From assembly GCF_000142905.1 (NCBI RefSeq), contig NW_013657634.1, positions 62,001-126,000 on the forward strand: a stretch of 64,000 bases of DNA, given 5' to 3'. How positions within the stretch are numbered: the stretch's first letter is position 1; every line of letters starts with the position of its first letter. The position numbers were made by a program, and so were the translations under genes. Shown here piece after piece: positions 8,954-14,897 of the stretch. The notes below the pieces were generated by a model. It was not told the DNA's origin. It made no database searches and worked only from the letters and a program-made list of their open reading frames with translations. The DNA comes from Thecamonas trahens ATCC 50062. Lineage: Eukaryota; Protista; Apusomonadida.

Positions 8954-11430
8954 ATGTCGTACGTGCCGTTGTGTATCCCCCCGCACTGCCACGGTCGCTT
9001 TCTTCAAACAACGTGTTTTGCACAAACCATTCCGTCGCGGCAGGCCCTTTTTTATCAATCGTCCATCAATGGTTTTCAATTATTTTTTTTGAAGCCCATG
9101 ACGAACACCGCGAAGCGTTCACAGGAGTCGCCCGCCCGTCCCCCCCCTCCTCCCCCCCCCCCCCCGGCACGCCATGTTCTTGCCCTTGCCACCTGTGCCT
9201 GGCACCAACTACGCACCAACCACACTACAATATGTCGGAGAGGTAGTTTATGTGACACTCTCAGCTATGTGGTTGGGATGGTCCTTGGTCTGACCCTCCT
9301 GGTCCCCTTGCCCTTGGCCTCCCCTCGCCCCCATCTGGCTCTCTCCGGCTTTGCTGGCCTTAGTTGGCTATGCCAAGACACCTTTTTTTCCCCAAAATTT
9401 CTCCCTGCTTTGCCGCCCCCCCCCTTTGTCGCGCGCATCTGCCCCGCTTCCTCCATACTGCCTCTCCATCGCATTGCGTTCTTCTTCTACTTCTCCTGCA
9501 GCGTGCATGCACTGTTTTGTCATTCTGTACACATGGCTCCTGTCCCGAGCTTGGCTTGCCCAAGGCCACGAATCTTCCAGGACAATTTTCACGACCTTTT
9601 TTCCCTCCCTGGCCACCCTATCCCATATGCAAGCGCATGCTTGCCTCCGCCACTACCACGAGCAAGGCGATGGTCGTTGCATTTTCCTGAGCCATTTCTC
9701 CCTCATCATTGTTGCTTGGTTGGCTACGTGGCGCGCTCTCCCATTCTTTCTCCTCGTCGACCCAACCGGCACACCCGCTCAGTAGGCTTGCATGCAGTAG
9801 CAGACTCACATGATGGCCTTTTTGATGGATGTTGGGAAACAGGGAGAAGGCTGTGGTTCAGGTCGTGGCGTCTGTTTTCCACTACATCGATGGGGCTTGG
9901 GCGCCAAAGGGCAGATCGTCCATCGGTCTGTATCACAACGCGGCGCTCAATCGATACCGTGTGGTCGCCTACGACGCTGCCAAGAACGTGACCATCAACT
10001 CGAACATGTCTGCTGACATGGTCTACCGCAAGGCCTCTGAGACCTTCCACCAGTGGTCCGACGGGCGTACCATCTACGGCGTCAACTTTGCAGATATCCC
10101 GACGGCCGACAAGTTTTTCGCAAACATGTCGTCGTCGATCGACGCTCTCAAGTCTTCGCCGCCCGCCGCTGCCTCGCCGGTTACCTCGCCGCAGCCGTCG
10201 CCGACGCTAACGCCGACGCCGACGCCGACGCCTGCGCCAAAGCCGGCATCAGCACCGGCACCGGCGCCCGCTATTGCGCCTGCCGATTTGGCTGCCAAGC
10301 TCGCCCGCGGCCCGCCGCCTGGCGGCCGCCCGCCGTCGGGTACGGGCGTCAAGCCCGCACCGTCGCCTGACGCCGGAAATGGTGGCGCTAGCGGTCCACC
10401 CGGAGCACGACCCATGGGTCCACAGCCCGGCGCCATGGGTGACATGTCTGAGCTGCAGGCCCGTCTTGCTGCCCGCAAGAACTCCAAACCTATCACCGAG
10501 CCGCCGCCGGCTGGTGCCAAGCCGCCACCGGCTGGTGCCAAGCCGCCGCCGGCTGGTACCAAGCCGCCGCCGGCTGGTGCCAAGCCGCCACCGGCTGGTG
10601 CCAAGCCCCCGCCGGCTGGTGCCAAGCCACCGCCGGCTGGTGCCAAGCCGCCACCGGCTGGTGCCAAGCCGCCACCGGCTGCCGCCAAGCCGCCNNNNNN
10701 NNNNNNNNNNNNNNNNNNNNNNNNNNNNNNNNNNNNNNNNNNNNNNNNNNNNNNNNNNNNNNNNNNNNNNNNNNNNNNNNNNNNNNNNNNNNNNNNNNNN
10801 NNNNNNNNNNNNNNNNNNNNNNNNNNNNNNNNNNNNNNNNNNNNNNNNNNNNNNNNNNNNNNNNNNNNNNNNNNNNNNNNNNNNNNNNNNNNNNNNNNNN
10901 NNNNNNNNNNNNNNNNNNNNNNNNNNNNNNNNNNNNNNNNNNNNNNNNNNNNNNNNNNNNNNNNNNNNNNNNNNNNNNNNNNNNNNNNNAAGCCACCGCC
11001 GGTGGTCCCGAGCAGGGTGACCGAGCCCGAGCCCCTGAGCGCCGAGCCGGAGCCGGCGCCGCCTGTGGTGCCCGAGCCGGACTTTGGCATCCCGCCGGGC
11101 GGCAGCAGCTTCCCTCTCCCCGGATCGTCAGCATTTGGCGCCGAGCTGCCGGCTGCGCCGCCTCCGGACCCATCGGCCTTTGCCACCATCAACTTTGAGG
11201 ATATCGGCGCCATCCCGATGGCCCCGCCCGACACTAGCACCGATGAGCTCCGCGAGCTCATCCAGGACCTTCGGACTGAGGTCGCCGATGTCCGCCTGGA
11301 CCTCCAGAGCTTCAAGTCTGAGATCACGTCCCTCCTCGCCACTTCGCTCGAGACCATCCGTGATGAGATCATCTACACCTTGGGTGGCACCCCGCTCGAG
11401 CAGCCGCTCGGCCTTACCCCGCTCAAGTAG
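8954..11430 (+). CDS. VASP: Ena/VASP actin regulator; 5-nt first coding exon 8954-8958, intron 8959-9842, exon 2 9843-11430 (contains assembly gap)
   Basis: ATGTC|GTACGT...AACAG|G gives MSEKAVVQ. EVH1 domain (YHNAALNRYRVV, TFHQWSDGRTIYGVNF), Pro-rich region, FAB-like DMSELQARLAARK and a C-terminal tetramerisation-like coiled coil (LETIRDEII). Confidence 0.88.
10501..11001 (+). repeat. 21-bp coding tandem repeat (PPPAGAK)n flanking an assembly gap (N 10695-10989)
   Basis: At least 9 units of CCGCCRCCGGCTGGTGCCAAG before the gap and a partial unit after it. Confidence 0.9.
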
Positions 11431-12035: not shown

Positions 12036-12057
12036 GATGATGATGACCATGATGATG

Positions 12058-12118
<61 letters not shown>
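12036..12118 (+). repeat. (GAT)n microsatellite
   Basis: Directly visible. Lies at the end of a weak 131-aa ORF (11754-12149). Confidence 0.9.
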
Positions 12119-12314
12119 GTACCATGACGATGATGAGTACCATCAGTAACTACTCGTCTCTTTTCTGTTTTCATCGTGGCGGTGAAGCGGGCGAGCGATG
12201 CGGTGGGAAGGTGGACGGGGCAAACGAGTGCGACTCGGCAAACGAGCGAAAGTGAAGAGTGTGACGGACGGGTCGACGACGGTGGGCGCCACGTGACTCA
12301 CCGACAAGGCGAGT

Positions 12315-14897
12315 ATGGAAGGTAGAGAAGAGGCAGAAGAGTGCTGGTCTCGGTGGAAGATGATTATTACAATATGGATGTGTATGTGTATTGTCGGCGT
12401 TGTAGGAGCAGCTGCTGGCTCGTTGGTGGCTGAAATGCAAGCCGTCCCCTCTGGCTGCTCCCTCGGAAGGGAGAACATTGTGGTCGAAGATAGCCATGTG
12501 CTCCTCTGCTGTCCACGTCTTTATGGCCGCCTCTGGGCAATGTTCCATCTCAGACTCTCTTCGCCACGTAACGATTCTTTTGCTGTTCAAGTCATCTCCA
12601 AATGGCTGCCATCGTCGTCGTCGTCGTCGTCGACATCATCTCCGTCATCGTTGTGGTCACCTTCACCGCTACTGTTCTCGCCTGCTACACAACACCATCA
12701 GGCGATGTCGTCGTCGGCAAGATGTACGCTACCAGAAGCAGCAGCGCTAGAGGCAGGTGCTACCGAGACGGCTGTGTGGCGGAGTCTGGCGCCGTCCAAG
12801 GATGAGGTGGGCGTAGTGGAGGCCAATGGCAAGTTTCCGGCCATGCGGCCGTGGATGGCTGCCAGTCGTGATGGCGGAGGCCCGCATCCGGACGTTGCAG
12901 TGTATGCAGTCCGGGTTGTGTGCCGGAACTGGTTCAAGCCGTGCCGCATCGTCGTGAGCCATGCAGAGGTGGACCAGCCGCATACAGGGATTGTGCCGAG
13001 GAGCATCGCCGCGATGGCGGCGGCTTGGTCTGGCGGCTTGGCATGGATTGCAGTGTACGGGCCGGGCTTGTTGCTGGCGGCAGCAGTGGTGCTCGCGCCG
13101 CGACGCTCGTGGAGTATTGCGCGTTCGCTGCGTGACCGGGTGCTGGCGGCAATTGTTCCTGCCGCGCATCGGCCGGCGGTGGTGCTTGCGCTGCGCGAGC
13201 GGCGGTGGGTGCGGGCGCTTAGCGAGGCCACACCGGACAATGACGACGATGCAGCAGCACCGCAGCTGCGGTTGCTCGGACGCAAGGTGGAACCCGCCGA
13301 GGCAGAGGCGCTCCAGCAGATGCGCGCGGTGTATGCGCAGCGACGGACGGCACTCGCGGCGCGGGCGGTGCGCGGAAGTGCGCCGCGGGTATGGGATGTG
13401 GCGGACACGTCGGTGGAAGCAGTGCTAGGGTATGTGGCCCGGGCTCGCGATGCCGAGCTCCGAGCACCGGTGCTTGCGGTCGGACTGGAGCCGCTGGGCG
13501 AGGCTGCGGCTGGTATGGCAGCGGCGCTTGCTGAGGACGAGTACTCGCAGTACGTGCGGCACACGGCGAATGGACTACTGCCTGCCCGCGACCTGGCGGC
13601 AGCGCGGGCGCTCGGCGCGTTTGCTGGCAAGTGCTTTGCTGAAGGAGTCAGCTTTCCGCTCCGCTACGCCGCAGACGTCTACCGCGAGCTGGTGGCGCGG
13701 CCCGATCGCGGGCGGGCGGCTTTGAGCGAGCTTGACGGTGGCATCGGCGCGTTTGTCAGCAGCTTTTGGCGAGTGGCCGATAGCGGAACTGGACTTGCTG
13801 AGGTAGTGCGGCTGATGAGCGCCGAGGCAGTGGCAACGCTTGTGTTGAGCCCGGCGGTTGTCGATCGGCGGAGCGTGGTAAGCGCGCTGCAGTGGCGACG
13901 CGGGCGGGATGACGGCGAGGCGCAGAGGTGGTTGAGCGAGCTACTGGTCTCGCTCGACGAGGCTACGATGGCGCTGGTGGCGGTCGCGGTGTTTGGGCGC
14001 GAGGTGCTGATGAGCGGGAAGCCCGGTGGGCGGGCGGTGGTGGCGCTCGGTGGGCGACTGGCCATGGTGAGACGTGGCGTTGTGGTTGTCCCCCACGCTG
14101 CAGCCAACCAGGCCGAGTTCAACTTGCTTGTCGTCTCTGCGCTCGGACTGGACGGTCTACGGCTGGCGTGCTGTGTCTGCCAGTACGAGGCGCGCGAGAG
14201 TGAGGGACTGCGATGCGAGGCCGGGCACTTTGTTTGTGCGCTCTGCTTTGACCAGTCTGTCCGAGTCCAGGTGGCACCCGAGTGCCTGGGGCAGTTCCGG
14301 GCAGCCGGCGCGCGCATTGTCTGCCCGCTCTTTACGGGCGAGCGAGGCGGGTGCACCGCGTCGCCGTTTACGATCGAAGAAGTGACGGGATGGGGAGGCG
14401 AGGCAAGCCGGGCGTTCCTGGCTGCGCGCGAGGCAGTCCGTGAGGGAGCCATGACCGAGCGGCTGGAGCAGGAGTTTGAGGACCGGCTGGCGCAGCGGAT
14501 GGAGCGGGCGTTGGCGCAAGACGCCGAGTCGCAGGAGGTCGAGCGGGCAGCGCTGCATGTCCAGAACCAGATCCTCACCTTGCGATGCCCGTCGTGCACG
14601 ACTGCGTTCTTTGACTACGACGGATGTGCGGCGCTGCGGTGCGGGGCGTGCCAGGCCACGTTCTGCGCCCTCTGTCTCACCGCTTGCGACAGCTCGAATG
14701 CCACCCACCGGCACGTCCGGACCTGTGACCTCAATCCCAACCCGGGCTCATACTTTGTCCAGGCAGCGCAGTTCGAGGCTGTCCATCGGGTCCGCAAGCG
14801 TGACCTCCTCGCCGCCTACCTCGACACCCTCCCATACCACGTGGCGCAGCGGGTCCGCCACGAGCGACGGACAGACTTTGCGGATCTGTTAGCGTAG
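12315..14897 (+). CDS. Predicted membrane-anchored E3 ligase: degenerate HECT-like domain + RING1 + Rcat (RBR-type)
   Basis: Hydrophobic N-terminus and a TM segment (GLAWIAVYGPGLLLAAAVVLA). HECT-like ARALGAFAGKCF..G...PL..DVYREL. RING CCVC...CEAGHFVCALC...CP. Rcat CPSC...FDYDGCAALRCGACQATFCALC. Confidence 0.8.
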   Translation: MEGREEAEECWSRWKMIITIWMCMCIVGVVGAAAGSLVAEMQAVPSGCSLGRENIVVEDSHVLLCCPRLYGRLWAMFHLRLSSPRNDSFAVQVISKWLPSSSSSSSTSSPSSLWSPSPLLFSPATQHHQAMSSSARCTLPEAAALEAGATETAVWRSLAPSKDEVGVVEANGKFPAMRPWMAASRDGGGPHPDVAVYAVRVVCRNWFKPCRIVVSHAEVDQPHTGIVPRSIAAMAAAWSGGLAWIAVYGPGLLLAAAVVLAPRRSWSIARSLRDRVLAAIVPAAHRPAVVLALRERRWVRALSEATPDNDDDAAAPQLRLLGRKVEPAEAEALQQMRAVYAQRRTALAARAVRGSAPRVWDVADTSVEAVLGYVARARDAELRAPVLAVGLEPLGEAAAGMAAALAEDEYSQYVRHTANGLLPARDLAAARALGAFAGKCFAEGVSFPLRYAADVYRELVARPDRGRAALSELDGGIGAFVSSFWRVADSGTGLAEVVRLMSAEAVATLVLSPAVVDRRSVVSALQWRRGRDDGEAQRWLSELLVSLDEATMALVAVAVFGREVLMSGKPGGRAVVALGGRLAMVRRGVVVVPHAAANQAEFNLLVVSALGLDGLRLACCVCQYEARESEGLRCEAGHFVCALCFDQSVRVQVAPECLGQFRAAGARIVCPLFTGERGGCTASPFTIEEVTGWGGEASRAFLAAREAVREGAMTERLEQEFEDRLAQRMERALAQDAESQEVERAALHVQNQILTLRCPSCTTAFFDYDGCAALRCGACQATFCALCLTACDSSNATHRHVRTCDLNPNPGSYFVQAAQFEAVHRVRKRDLLAAYLDTLPYHVAQRVRHERRTDFADLLA

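What the first reader, a model, noticed from the sequence alone, without database searches (positions are those of the whole stretch)
12315..14897. Receptor-like E3 ligase: TM anchor + catalytically dead HECT-like domain fused to an RBR lacking the IBR
Seen in sequence: hydrophobic N-terminus, a possible ectodomain and a TM helix (~13030-13100). The region ~13430-14150 tracks the HECT consensus: RALGAFAGKCFAEG...PLRYAADVYREL; AEAVATLVLSPAVVD; QRWLSELLVSLDEATMALVAVAVFG; then AMVRRGVVVVP where HECTs have AHTCFN.L.LP, so the catalytic Cys is absent. It is followed directly by RING1 (~14169-14355), a long charged helix instead of an IBR zinc finger, and an Rcat with DGC catalytic motif (~14585-14730). 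Established: HECT and RBR are separate thioester E3 classes. Inference: a pseudo-HECT acting as a scaffold or regulator for an IBR-less RBR, possibly gated by an extracellular signal. I know of no described family with this architecture.
Basis: partly seen in the sequence, partly recalled or inferred. Interest (0 to 1): 0.8.

Follow-up and report, generated by a model that had tools for sequence, protein, structure and literature searches.

The report
Membrane-anchored pseudo-HECT plus IBR-less RBR ligase
A gene of the protist Thecamonas trahens most likely encodes a membrane-anchored ubiquitin ligase that joins a degenerate HECT-like domain, apparently no longer catalytic, to a stripped-down RBR module lacking the middle zinc finger, a combination I found described nowhere.

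Summary
The window is Thecamonas trahens, and the ORF is AMSG_09342, annotated as an uncharacterized protein.

- **C-terminal module (aa 619-804):** it is RBR-type. RING1 is C3HC4. A Cys-free helical hairpin follows, then an Rcat finger whose DGC cysteine aligns with the catalytic Cys of CUL9, HOIL-1, ARIH1/2, HOIP and parkin. The AF2 model has pLDDT 95, and all top structural matches are RBR ligases. No IBR is present.
- **Module family:** the same IBR-less module has about 2,600 cluster representatives in diverse eukaryotes. Among the long members it is usually fused to kinases or helicases. I found no description of it.
- **Middle region (aa ~335-612):** it is a divergent HECT domain.
  - Profile-profile comparison with 14 genuine Thecamonas HECT domains gives 93.7% probability and E 1.9e-7, above all shuffles.
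  - The ESM Atlas model matches HERC, NEDD4 and HACE1 HECT domains at TM 0.61-0.64.
  - It lacks about 58 residues where HECT has its E2-binding subdomain, and it has no Cys in the C-lobe.
- **Paralogs:** two Thecamonas paralogs carry kinase, HECT-like and RBR-like parts. This copy has a hydrophobic N-terminus and one TM helix instead of the kinase.
- **Corrections:** The "receptor" idea is untested.

The parts
12602..12723 (+). Annotated exon 1 of AMSG_09342. It is in a different frame from the long ORF and encodes a very hydrophobic N-terminus of 40 aa plus 2 nt, partly built from a (GTC)n repeat. It is a possible signal peptide or signal anchor.
   Evidence: P0152 mapped onto the window. 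The Kyte-Doolittle mean reaches 3.2. No transcript data were available.
12724..12784 (+). Annotated 61-nt GT..AG intron.
   Evidence: P0152 compared with the window sequence.
12785..14897 (+). Exon 2, a single open frame from aa ~158 of the ORF to the stop. It carries every domain listed below.
   Evidence: GC3 is 0.6-0.9 throughout. Against a second isolate there are only 3 substitutions in 2113 nt (2 synonymous, 1 E630A).
12786..13031 (+). Segment of ~80 residues before the TM helix, of unknown fold. It would be luminal or extracellular if the N-terminus is a signal peptide.
   Evidence: No Pfam match and no paralogue in the genome. The topology is inferred only.
13032..13100 (+). Predicted single transmembrane helix (aa 240-262), followed by a basic stretch. 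This places the rest of the protein in the cytosol.
   Evidence: Hydropathy 1.67-2.13. The positive-inside rule comes from established knowledge. No dedicated TM predictor was available.
13318..14150 (+). HECT-like domain (aa ~335-612). It retains the N-lobe core and the first half of the C-lobe. About 58 residues of the N-lobe are missing where HECT has its E2-binding subdomain, and there is no catalytic Cys. The confidently aligned core is 13497-14030.
   Evidence: hhalign against 14 Thecamonas HECT domains gives 93.7% probability, E 1.9e-7 and 181 columns. The real score is 58.5 against shuffle maxima of 27 and 45. The ESM Atlas gives 29 of 30 feature hits to HECT and TM 0.61-0.64 to HECT models. 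Pfam HECT matches the paralogues below threshold. C440 is the only Cys in the domain.
14169..14354 (+). RBR-type RING1 (C3HC4: C619, C622, C634, H638, C641, C644, C670, C680).
14355..14585 (+). Cys-free helical hairpin (aa 681-757) in the place of the IBR. It matches the helices that flank the IBR in RBRs.
   Evidence: AF2 helices at model residues 88-125 and 128-145, pLDDT above 90. The family linker is 66-89 aa, with 0-2 Cys in 123 of 128 members and never 6 or more. VIA aligned ranges.
14586..14726 (+). Rcat (RING2-like) zinc finger. The putative catalytic Cys771 has its codon at 14625-14627. The residue at +2 is Ala rather than the usual His.
   Evidence: phmmer aligns DGC with the catalytic Cys of CUL9, HOIL-1, ARIH2, ARIH1, HOIP and parkin. 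The Cys is invariant in 128 of 128 members and Ala is at +2 in 126 of 128. Pfam IBR_1 matches at E 0.0098, below its threshold.
14727..14894 (+). Conserved C-terminal helices that pack after the Rcat.

Best explanation
AMSG_09342 of Thecamonas trahens encodes an E3 ubiquitin ligase tethered to a membrane by one TM helix near its N-terminus, with the rest of the protein in the cytosol.

The catalytic engine is the C-terminal IBR-less RBR module. RING1 docks an E2~ubiquitin. Ubiquitin is passed to Cys771 of the Rcat finger as a thioester, and from there to a substrate.

The preceding ~280 residues are a HECT domain that has lost both of its own catalytic elements: the E2-binding part of the N-lobe and the C-lobe cysteine. 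It most likely survives as a scaffold. It could hold substrate or ubiquitin, or hold the Rcat in an inhibited state, as accessory domains do in parkin and ARIH1.

The gene belongs to a three-member Thecamonas family. The other two members carry a Ser/Thr kinase upstream of the same HECT-like and RBR-like pair. This copy has a hydrophobic N-terminus and a TM helix where they carry the kinase.

Shown here: the folds and homologies, the conserved ligands, the absence of the IBR and of the HECT cysteine, and the paralogue architecture. Inferred: thioester chemistry, the role of the HECT remnant, and the membrane topology.
For: RBR module:
- AF2 model with pLDDT 95.2.
- All leading Foldseek hits are RBR ligases.
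- The family profile hits parkin RING1 at E 7e-7.
- The DGC cysteine aligns with the catalytic Cys of six RBRs.
- That Cys is invariant in 128 of 128 modules, and no IBR is present in any of them.

HECT relation:
- hhalign 93.7%, E 1.9e-7, above 200 shuffles and the reversed control.
- In a six-frame scan of the genome with PF00632, the only sub-threshold hits are the two paralogues, at the matching profile positions.
- ESM features and ESMFold structure point to HECT for this protein. Features do so for the paralogue too.

Loss of catalytic elements: a gap of ~58 residues in the N-lobe, and no Cys in aa 441-618.

Paralogues.

TM helix and coding status.
Against: - Pfam HECT does not match this protein at all. 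It matches the paralogues at 16-18 bits, below the 23.9-bit cut-off.
- The profile built from three sequences found no HECT chain among PDB sequences.
- My own AF2 model of the middle region failed, with pLDDT 37. The structural support therefore comes from one language-model prediction with a whole-protein pLDDT of 0.61.
- The Rcat lacks the His at +2 that acts as general base in canonical RBRs.
- No E-value for the Rcat alone is better than 1.3e-3.
- TM helix and topology rest on hydropathy. The start of the gene is unverified.
Confidence: 0.55

Rival explanations
1. The C-terminal module works as a plain RING E3. The second finger is only structural, a relic of an IBR or Rcat, and ubiquitin goes directly from the E2 to the substrate.
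For: The usual catalytic His at +2 is Ala in 126 of 128 members. The finger also gives a very weak alignment to the parkin IBR. Pfam's only match is to an IBR model, below its threshold.
Against: The finger has one more invariant Cys than two zinc sites of the IBR type need, and that Cys aligns with the catalytic Cys of six RBRs. RING1 resembles RBR RING1 more than other RINGs. The helix-Rcat-helix arrangement matches RNF216.
Confidence: 0.2
2. The middle region is not HECT-derived. It is a lineage-specific alanine-rich helical linker, and the matches come from one short motif and composition.
For: Pfam and single-sequence hhalign pick up only the ~35-residue GKC motif. The feature score of 0.91 is reached by 4-10% of shuffled proteins, and only 166 features are shared. 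AF2 failed.
Against: The three-sequence profile aligns 181 columns in the right order across both lobes. Its score of 58.5 exceeds maxima of 27 (column shuffles) and 45 (block shuffles), and the reversed control scores 17.9. The C-lobe part alone gives E 1.9e-4. The independent ESMFold model aligns 254-268 of 296 residues to six different HECT clusters at TM 0.61-0.64.
Confidence: 0.12
3. The protein is soluble. Translation starts at a downstream Met, and the hydrophobic stretches lie in the 5' leader or are buried helices.
For: No transcript evidence was available. Exon 1 is partly a (GTC)n repeat. The N-terminal ~180 residues have no homologue anywhere.
Against: The frame stays open with coding-like GC3 from about aa 150. 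By my own estimate, about 180 stop-free codons at this GC content have a chance of roughly 0.005. Exon 2, including the TM segment, is about five times less polymorphic than the upstream flank.
Confidence: 0.2
4. The gene is a decaying paralogue that lost its kinase and no longer functions.
For: It lacks the kinase found in both paralogues. The C59 paralogue shows a frame shift within its Rcat.
Against: There is an uninterrupted 704-codon exon. All 8 RING1 ligands and all the conserved Rcat Cys and His residues are intact. The second isolate differs by 2 synonymous and 1 non-synonymous change.
Confidence: 0.08

Closest known systems
RBR E3 ligases (parkin, HOIL-1, RNF216, HOIP, ARIH1/2, CUL9)
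   Same: RING1 has the RBR-type fold and the helix that follows it. The Rcat finger has a free, invariant Cys at the catalytic position, and the helices that flank the IBR are kept. The expected mechanism is the same two-step transfer from E2 to the Rcat Cys to the substrate.
   Different: There is no IBR zinc finger. The 66-89-residue linker is helical and nearly free of Cys. Ala replaces the His at +2 from the catalytic Cys. No Pfam RBR, IBR or RING model reaches its threshold.
HECT E3 ligases (E6AP, NEDD4, HERC, HACE1)
   Same: The N-lobe core motif and the first half of the C-lobe align in the right order. The predicted fold superposes on HECT models.
   Different: About 58 N-lobe residues are missing, in the part that I take, from my own knowledge of the E6AP-UbcH7 structure, to be the E2-binding subdomain. 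There is no catalytic Cys. The domain is internal rather than at the C-terminus, where HECT domains normally sit (PMC9547173).
G2E3
   Same: The HECT survey cites it as having a non-functional HECT domain together with RING/PHD-like fingers that carry the ligase activity (PMC3673628). The logic is the same: a dead HECT domain plus a zinc-finger E3.
   Different: In G2E3 the fingers are N-terminal PHD/RING-like domains, not an RBR, and the HECT domain is C-terminal. I found no sequence relationship.
Membrane-anchored RING and RBR ligases (PA-TM-RING proteins, RNF43/ZNRF3, RNF144A, RNF19A)
   Same: They have a single TM helix with a cytosolic ligase domain. This comparison rests on my own knowledge, not on a test made here.
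   Different: Those proteins have a recognisable luminal domain or a C-terminal anchor. Here the segment before the TM helix has no known fold, and the anchor is N-terminal.
ZNFX1 Miz + RZ 'bi-catalytic' module
   Same: It is described as an E2-binding RING-like domain that hands ubiquitin to a separate small Cys-bearing zinc finger, without an IBR (bioRxiv 10.1101/2025.10.14.682297). Relatives of the module studied here are also found fused to SF1 helicases.
   Different: Different domains are involved: Miz and RZ in ZNFX1, against RBR-type RING1 and Rcat here.

Membership tests
HECT (PF00632) | Sequence match above the family's curated threshold. | tested here: not met
   This protein gives no hit. 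The paralogues score 16-18 bits against a cut-off of 23.9, over profile positions 37-72 only.
HECT (PF00632) | Bilobal HECT fold or remote homology. | tested here: met
   hhalign 93.7%, E 1.9e-7, 181 columns, above all shuffles. The ESMFold model reaches TM 0.61-0.64 to six HECT clusters. My own AF2 model failed.
HECT (PF00632) | Catalytic cysteine in the C-lobe. | tested here: not met
   There is no Cys in aa 441-618. Val582 stands where the C59 paralogue has a Cys.
HECT (PF00632) | E2-binding part of the N-lobe. | tested here: not met
   About 21 residues of the query span about 79 template columns. Assigning that gap to the E2-binding subdomain rests on my own knowledge.
HECT (PF00632) | Domain located at the C-terminus of the protein (PMC9547173). 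| tested here: not met
   It is followed by ~250 residues of RBR-like module.
RBR (RING1-IBR-Rcat) | RING1 of the RBR type. | tested here: met
RBR (RING1-IBR-Rcat) | IBR zinc finger between the two fingers. | tested here: not met
   The 77-residue linker has no Cys and is predicted helical. This holds family-wide in 128 modules.
RBR (RING1-IBR-Rcat) | Rcat with a catalytic Cys that is not a zinc ligand. | tested here: met
   Cys771 aligns with the catalytic Cys of CUL9, HOIL-1, ARIH1/2, HOIP and parkin and is invariant in 128 of 128. That it is not a zinc ligand is inferred from the Cys/His count, not measured on the model.
RBR (RING1-IBR-Rcat) | His two residues after the catalytic Cys. This feature is taken from my own knowledge of parkin, HHARI and HOIP. 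| tested here: not met
   Ala in 126 of 128 members.
RBR (RING1-IBR-Rcat) | E3~ubiquitin thioester intermediate. | not testable with these tools
   This needs a biochemical assay.
Single-pass membrane protein | Signal peptide or anchor plus a TM helix. | tested here: inconclusive
   Hydropathy peaks lie in exon 1 and at aa 240-262, with basic residues after the second. No SignalP or DeepTMHMM was available, and there are no transcript data.

The most novel reading that the evidence does not exclude
The RING1-helix-Rcat module could be an unrecognised, widespread fourth flavour of thioester E3: an RBR without the IBR and without the catalytic His. In protists it is habitually wired in cis to kinases and helicases, a PINK1-and-parkin kind of logic within one polypeptide. 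In Thecamonas it captured a HECT domain that then lost its own E2 site and cysteine. That would be the first case of a pseudo-HECT serving as the regulatory or substrate arm of another thioester ligase, here tethered to a membrane.
Probability: 0.3. Interest if true: 0.75.

Novelty: new variant of a known kind. Interest (0 to 1): 0.6.

Why it matters
HECT and RBR ligases are treated as separate classes, each complete in itself. This protein would be a natural experiment in which one class was reduced to a shell and its two catalytic functions, E2 docking and the thioester cysteine, are supplied by the other class on the same chain.

The IBR-less RBR module matters more broadly. It has about 2,600 cluster representatives across diverse eukaryotes: oomycetes, cryptophytes, Paulinella, an ichthyosporean, an apusomonad and one insect genome record. 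No Pfam model reaches its threshold on it. Of 38 long members, 20 are fused to kinases and about 7 to SF1 helicases.

If the module is active, it shows that the IBR and the canonical His are dispensable for RBR-type catalysis, and it offers a small module of about 190 residues (RING1 to Rcat, aa 619-804) for mechanistic work.

Tried and rejected
- AF2 of the middle region with a three-sequence alignment gave pLDDT 37. The model was unusable and I did not search with it.
- The word-indexed homologue search failed three times: whole protein, middle region, and module alone. In the first two, low-complexity alanine-rich candidates filled the list.
- A metagenome scan with patterns from the middle domain found no relative.
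- An HMM of the middle domain against 167 collected family proteins found only Thecamonas sequences. I therefore could not show the HECT-like plus RBR-like fusion outside this species.
- The three-sequence profile against PDB sequences gave no HECT hit.
- Literature searches for an IBR-less RBR, a kinase-RBR fusion or a HECT-RBR fusion found nothing relevant. This is not proof of absence, because subscription papers are not covered.
- I considered an RZ finger (RNF213/ZNFX1 type) for the second finger. I rejected it because every sequence and structure match is to an Rcat.
- I considered that a kinase exon might lie upstream. I rejected this because the ~900 bp back to the VASP-like gene hold no kinase-like ORF, and Pfam sees no kinase in the ORF.
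- I sent no complex-prediction job, because no claim in this report depends on one.
Full report
**What is there.** The window is part of contig 46 of a 28.7-Mb eukaryotic genome. An exact-sequence look-up identifies it as Thecamonas trahens ATCC 50062. The gene is AMSG_09342 (XP_013754727.1), annotated as a 744-aa uncharacterized protein.

The 5' third of that ORF is doubtful:
- GC3 is 0.43-0.6 up to about codon 150 and 0.6-0.9 afterwards.
- The public model starts at 12602 in another frame. It encodes a 40-residue, very hydrophobic N-terminus that is partly a (GTC)n repeat, removes a 61-nt GT..AG intron (12724-12784), and joins the long frame at codon ~158.
- A contig from another sample (ERZ505273) is 99.3% identical. 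It differs at 3 positions in the 2113-nt exon 2 (2 synonymous, 1 E630A). In the 1576 nt upstream it differs by about 11 events, three of which fall within 12315-12601.

These numbers are small. They fit a coding exon 2, which includes the TM segment, and a non-coding 12315-12601.

**The C-terminal module.** Residues 610-860 find 2,582 cluster representatives at E <= 0.001 among 1.84 billion proteins, and 1,303 at E <= 1e-10.

Conservation in 56 aligned members:
- The eight RING1 ligands are conserved (C619, C622, C634, H638, C641, C644, C670, C680).
- A second finger carries C758, C761, C771, C776, C779, C784, C787, C791, H798, H800 and C804.

Structure:
- AF2 with this alignment gives pLDDT 95.2. 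The model shows a RING, a long helical hairpin, a small finger and two C-terminal helices.
- All of the top 45 Foldseek hits listed are RBR ligases (HOIL-1, RNF216, parkin, HOIP, ARIH1/2). Probabilities reach 1.0. E-values are only 3e-3 or weaker and global TM is low, as expected for flexible multi-domain chains.

Sequence:
- The family profile hits parkin RING1 at E 7e-7.
- The finger alone aligns best with the RING2/Rcat of CUL9 (E 1.3e-3), HOIL-1, ARIH2, ARIH1, HOIP and parkin. In the alignments printed (CUL9, HOIL-1, ARIH2), Cys771 sits on the Cys of the EGC/DGC/GGC motif that I know as catalytic.

**No IBR.** Between C680 and C758 there is no cysteine, and the model is helical there. In 128 complete modules:
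- The linker is 66-89 residues, median 78.
- It has 0-2 Cys in 123 cases and never 6 or more, so an IBR cannot be formed.
- The Cys771 equivalent is invariant.
- The residue at +2 is Ala in 126 of 128. Canonical RBRs have a His there (my own knowledge).

The module is therefore RBR-derived but fails two defining features of the family. I file it as an RBR variant rather than a member in good standing.

Pfam sees only a sub-threshold IBR_1 match. Members come from Pythium, Sphaeroforma, Rhodomonas, Paulinella, a dipteran genome record and many metagenomes, and every named record is hypothetical or named only for another domain. Of 38 long members, 20 carry a protein kinase, 7 carry an SF1 helicase domain, and a few carry DEAD helicases, ankyrin repeats or ubiquitin-like domains.

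**The middle region.** Pfam and PDB sequence searches with this protein alone give nothing for aa 300-618. The genome holds two paralogues:
- One lies on contig 39. Its public model is XP_013755514.1, with LRR, coiled coil, kinase, middle region and module.
- One lies on contig 59, with kinase, middle region and module.

The three middle regions align at 35% identity.

Evidence that the middle region is HECT-related:
- Pfam HECT matches both paralogues at E 0.003-0.008 over profile positions 37-72, below its threshold.
- In a six-frame scan of the whole genome with PF00632, the only sub-threshold hits, after some 24 hits above the cut-off, are these two loci.
- I aligned 14 genuine Thecamonas HECT domains taken from that scan and compared the two profiles. 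The result was 93.7% probability, E 1.9e-7, score 58.5 and 181 aligned columns. The alignment runs from the N-lobe core motif (ALGAFAGKCFAEGVSFPLRYAADVYRELV) to the C-lobe stretch that corresponds to FvTGs.rlP.
- Controls: the reversed profile scores 17.9, 100 column shuffles reach at most 27.1, and 100 shuffles of 15-column blocks reach at most 45.4. The C-lobe part alone gives E 1.9e-4.
- Independently, the ESM Atlas holds this protein. 29 of 30 nearest clusters by features are HECT, with a top score of 0.91. Its own ESMFold model aligns 254-268 of 296 residues to HERC3, HERC4, HACE1, NEDD4-like and UBE3A-like models at TM 0.61-0.64.
- The paralogue also gives HECT by features, at 0.86, which is a lead only.

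My own AF2 attempt failed with pLDDT 37. The structural evidence therefore rests on a single predictor.

**What the HECT-like domain lacks.**
- In the profile alignment, about 21 residues of this protein span about 79 HECT columns. From my knowledge of the E6AP-UbcH7 structure, I take that stretch to be the small E2-binding subdomain of the N-lobe.
- No cysteine lies in aa 441-618.
- The catalytic loop itself aligns only at low confidence.
- In the paralogue alignment, Val582 stands where the contig-59 copy has a Cys, eight residues before a conserved LP. Whether that paralogue keeps an active HECT cysteine is open.
- HECT domains normally end the protein (PMC9547173). This one is internal.

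**Membrane anchor.** aa 240-262 form the only strong hydropathy peak in exon 2, with a mean of up to 2.13. They are followed by a basic stretch, which by the positive-inside rule puts the ligase part in the cytosol. The annotated exon 1 adds a hydrophobic N-terminus. The ~80 residues between them match no family and have no paralogue. Nothing supports a ligand-binding ectodomain, so 'receptor-like' remains a guess. An anchor in an internal membrane is equally possible.

**How it most likely works.** By homology, RING1 recruits E2~Ub and Cys771 takes the ubiquitin. The two helices that flank the IBR in RBRs are retained and may position the donor ubiquitin. The HECT remnant has lost both its E2 site and its cysteine, so it cannot act as a HECT ligase. 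It may be a scaffold for substrate or ubiquitin, or an autoinhibitory partner of the Rcat. All of this is inferred.

The nearest precedent I found is G2E3, which the HECT survey cites as having a non-functional HECT domain together with active RING/PHD-like fingers (PMC3673628). That survey also reports that T. trahens expanded its HECT repertoire independently. It collected sequences with an HMMER search and would have missed these genes.

**Verdict.** The finding is real and the architecture is unusual. I found no description of it in the searchable literature. It combines known folds, so I rate it a new variant of a known kind. As far as I could see, the HECT-like fusion is confined to three genes of one species. 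The IBR-less RBR module is the part with wider reach.

Noticed in passing
L003:1150-1620 (G000 contig 59, minus strand): The contig-59 paralogue (kinase, HECT-like region, RING1, helix) changes frame by one base in a T run inside its Rcat, between CPRCDAAF and CDYSGCAAL. This could be an assembly error or a real frameshift. This copy also has a Cys near the HECT catalytic position and a longer insert where the other copies lack the E2-binding subdomain.
   Followed up: partly
L002:1388-1440 (G000 contig 39): The public model of the contig-39 paralogue removes a 53-nt intron just after the HECT-like C-lobe motif. As a result it has no counterpart of the ~40 residues that hold the catalytic-loop region in the other two copies.
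   Followed up: partly
window 12036-12125: A (GAT)n microsatellite lies upstream of the gene. It creates poly-Asp and poly-His ORFs on the two strands. It is 6 nt shorter in the second isolate.
   Followed up: no
window 12608-12630: A (GTC)n repeat encodes the valine run of the annotated N-terminus. A hydrophobic leader may thus have arisen from a trinucleotide repeat.
   Followed up: no
window 10700-11050: A run of N (read as X) interrupts the proline-rich repeat of the upstream Ena/VASP-like ORF (9829-11430).
   Followed up: no
P0005, P0011, P0023, P0025, P0031, P0069 and others: Most long relatives of the module carry a Ser/Thr kinase directly upstream of RING1. Others carry SF1 or DEAD helicases, and P0025 carries ankyrin repeats with a ubiquitin-like domain. 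The family appears to have no Pfam model of its own.
   Followed up: partly
L024 (ENA ERZ505273, NODE_2878): An independent assembly holds this locus at 99.3% identity, so a second Thecamonas isolate or sample exists in public data.
   Followed up: partly
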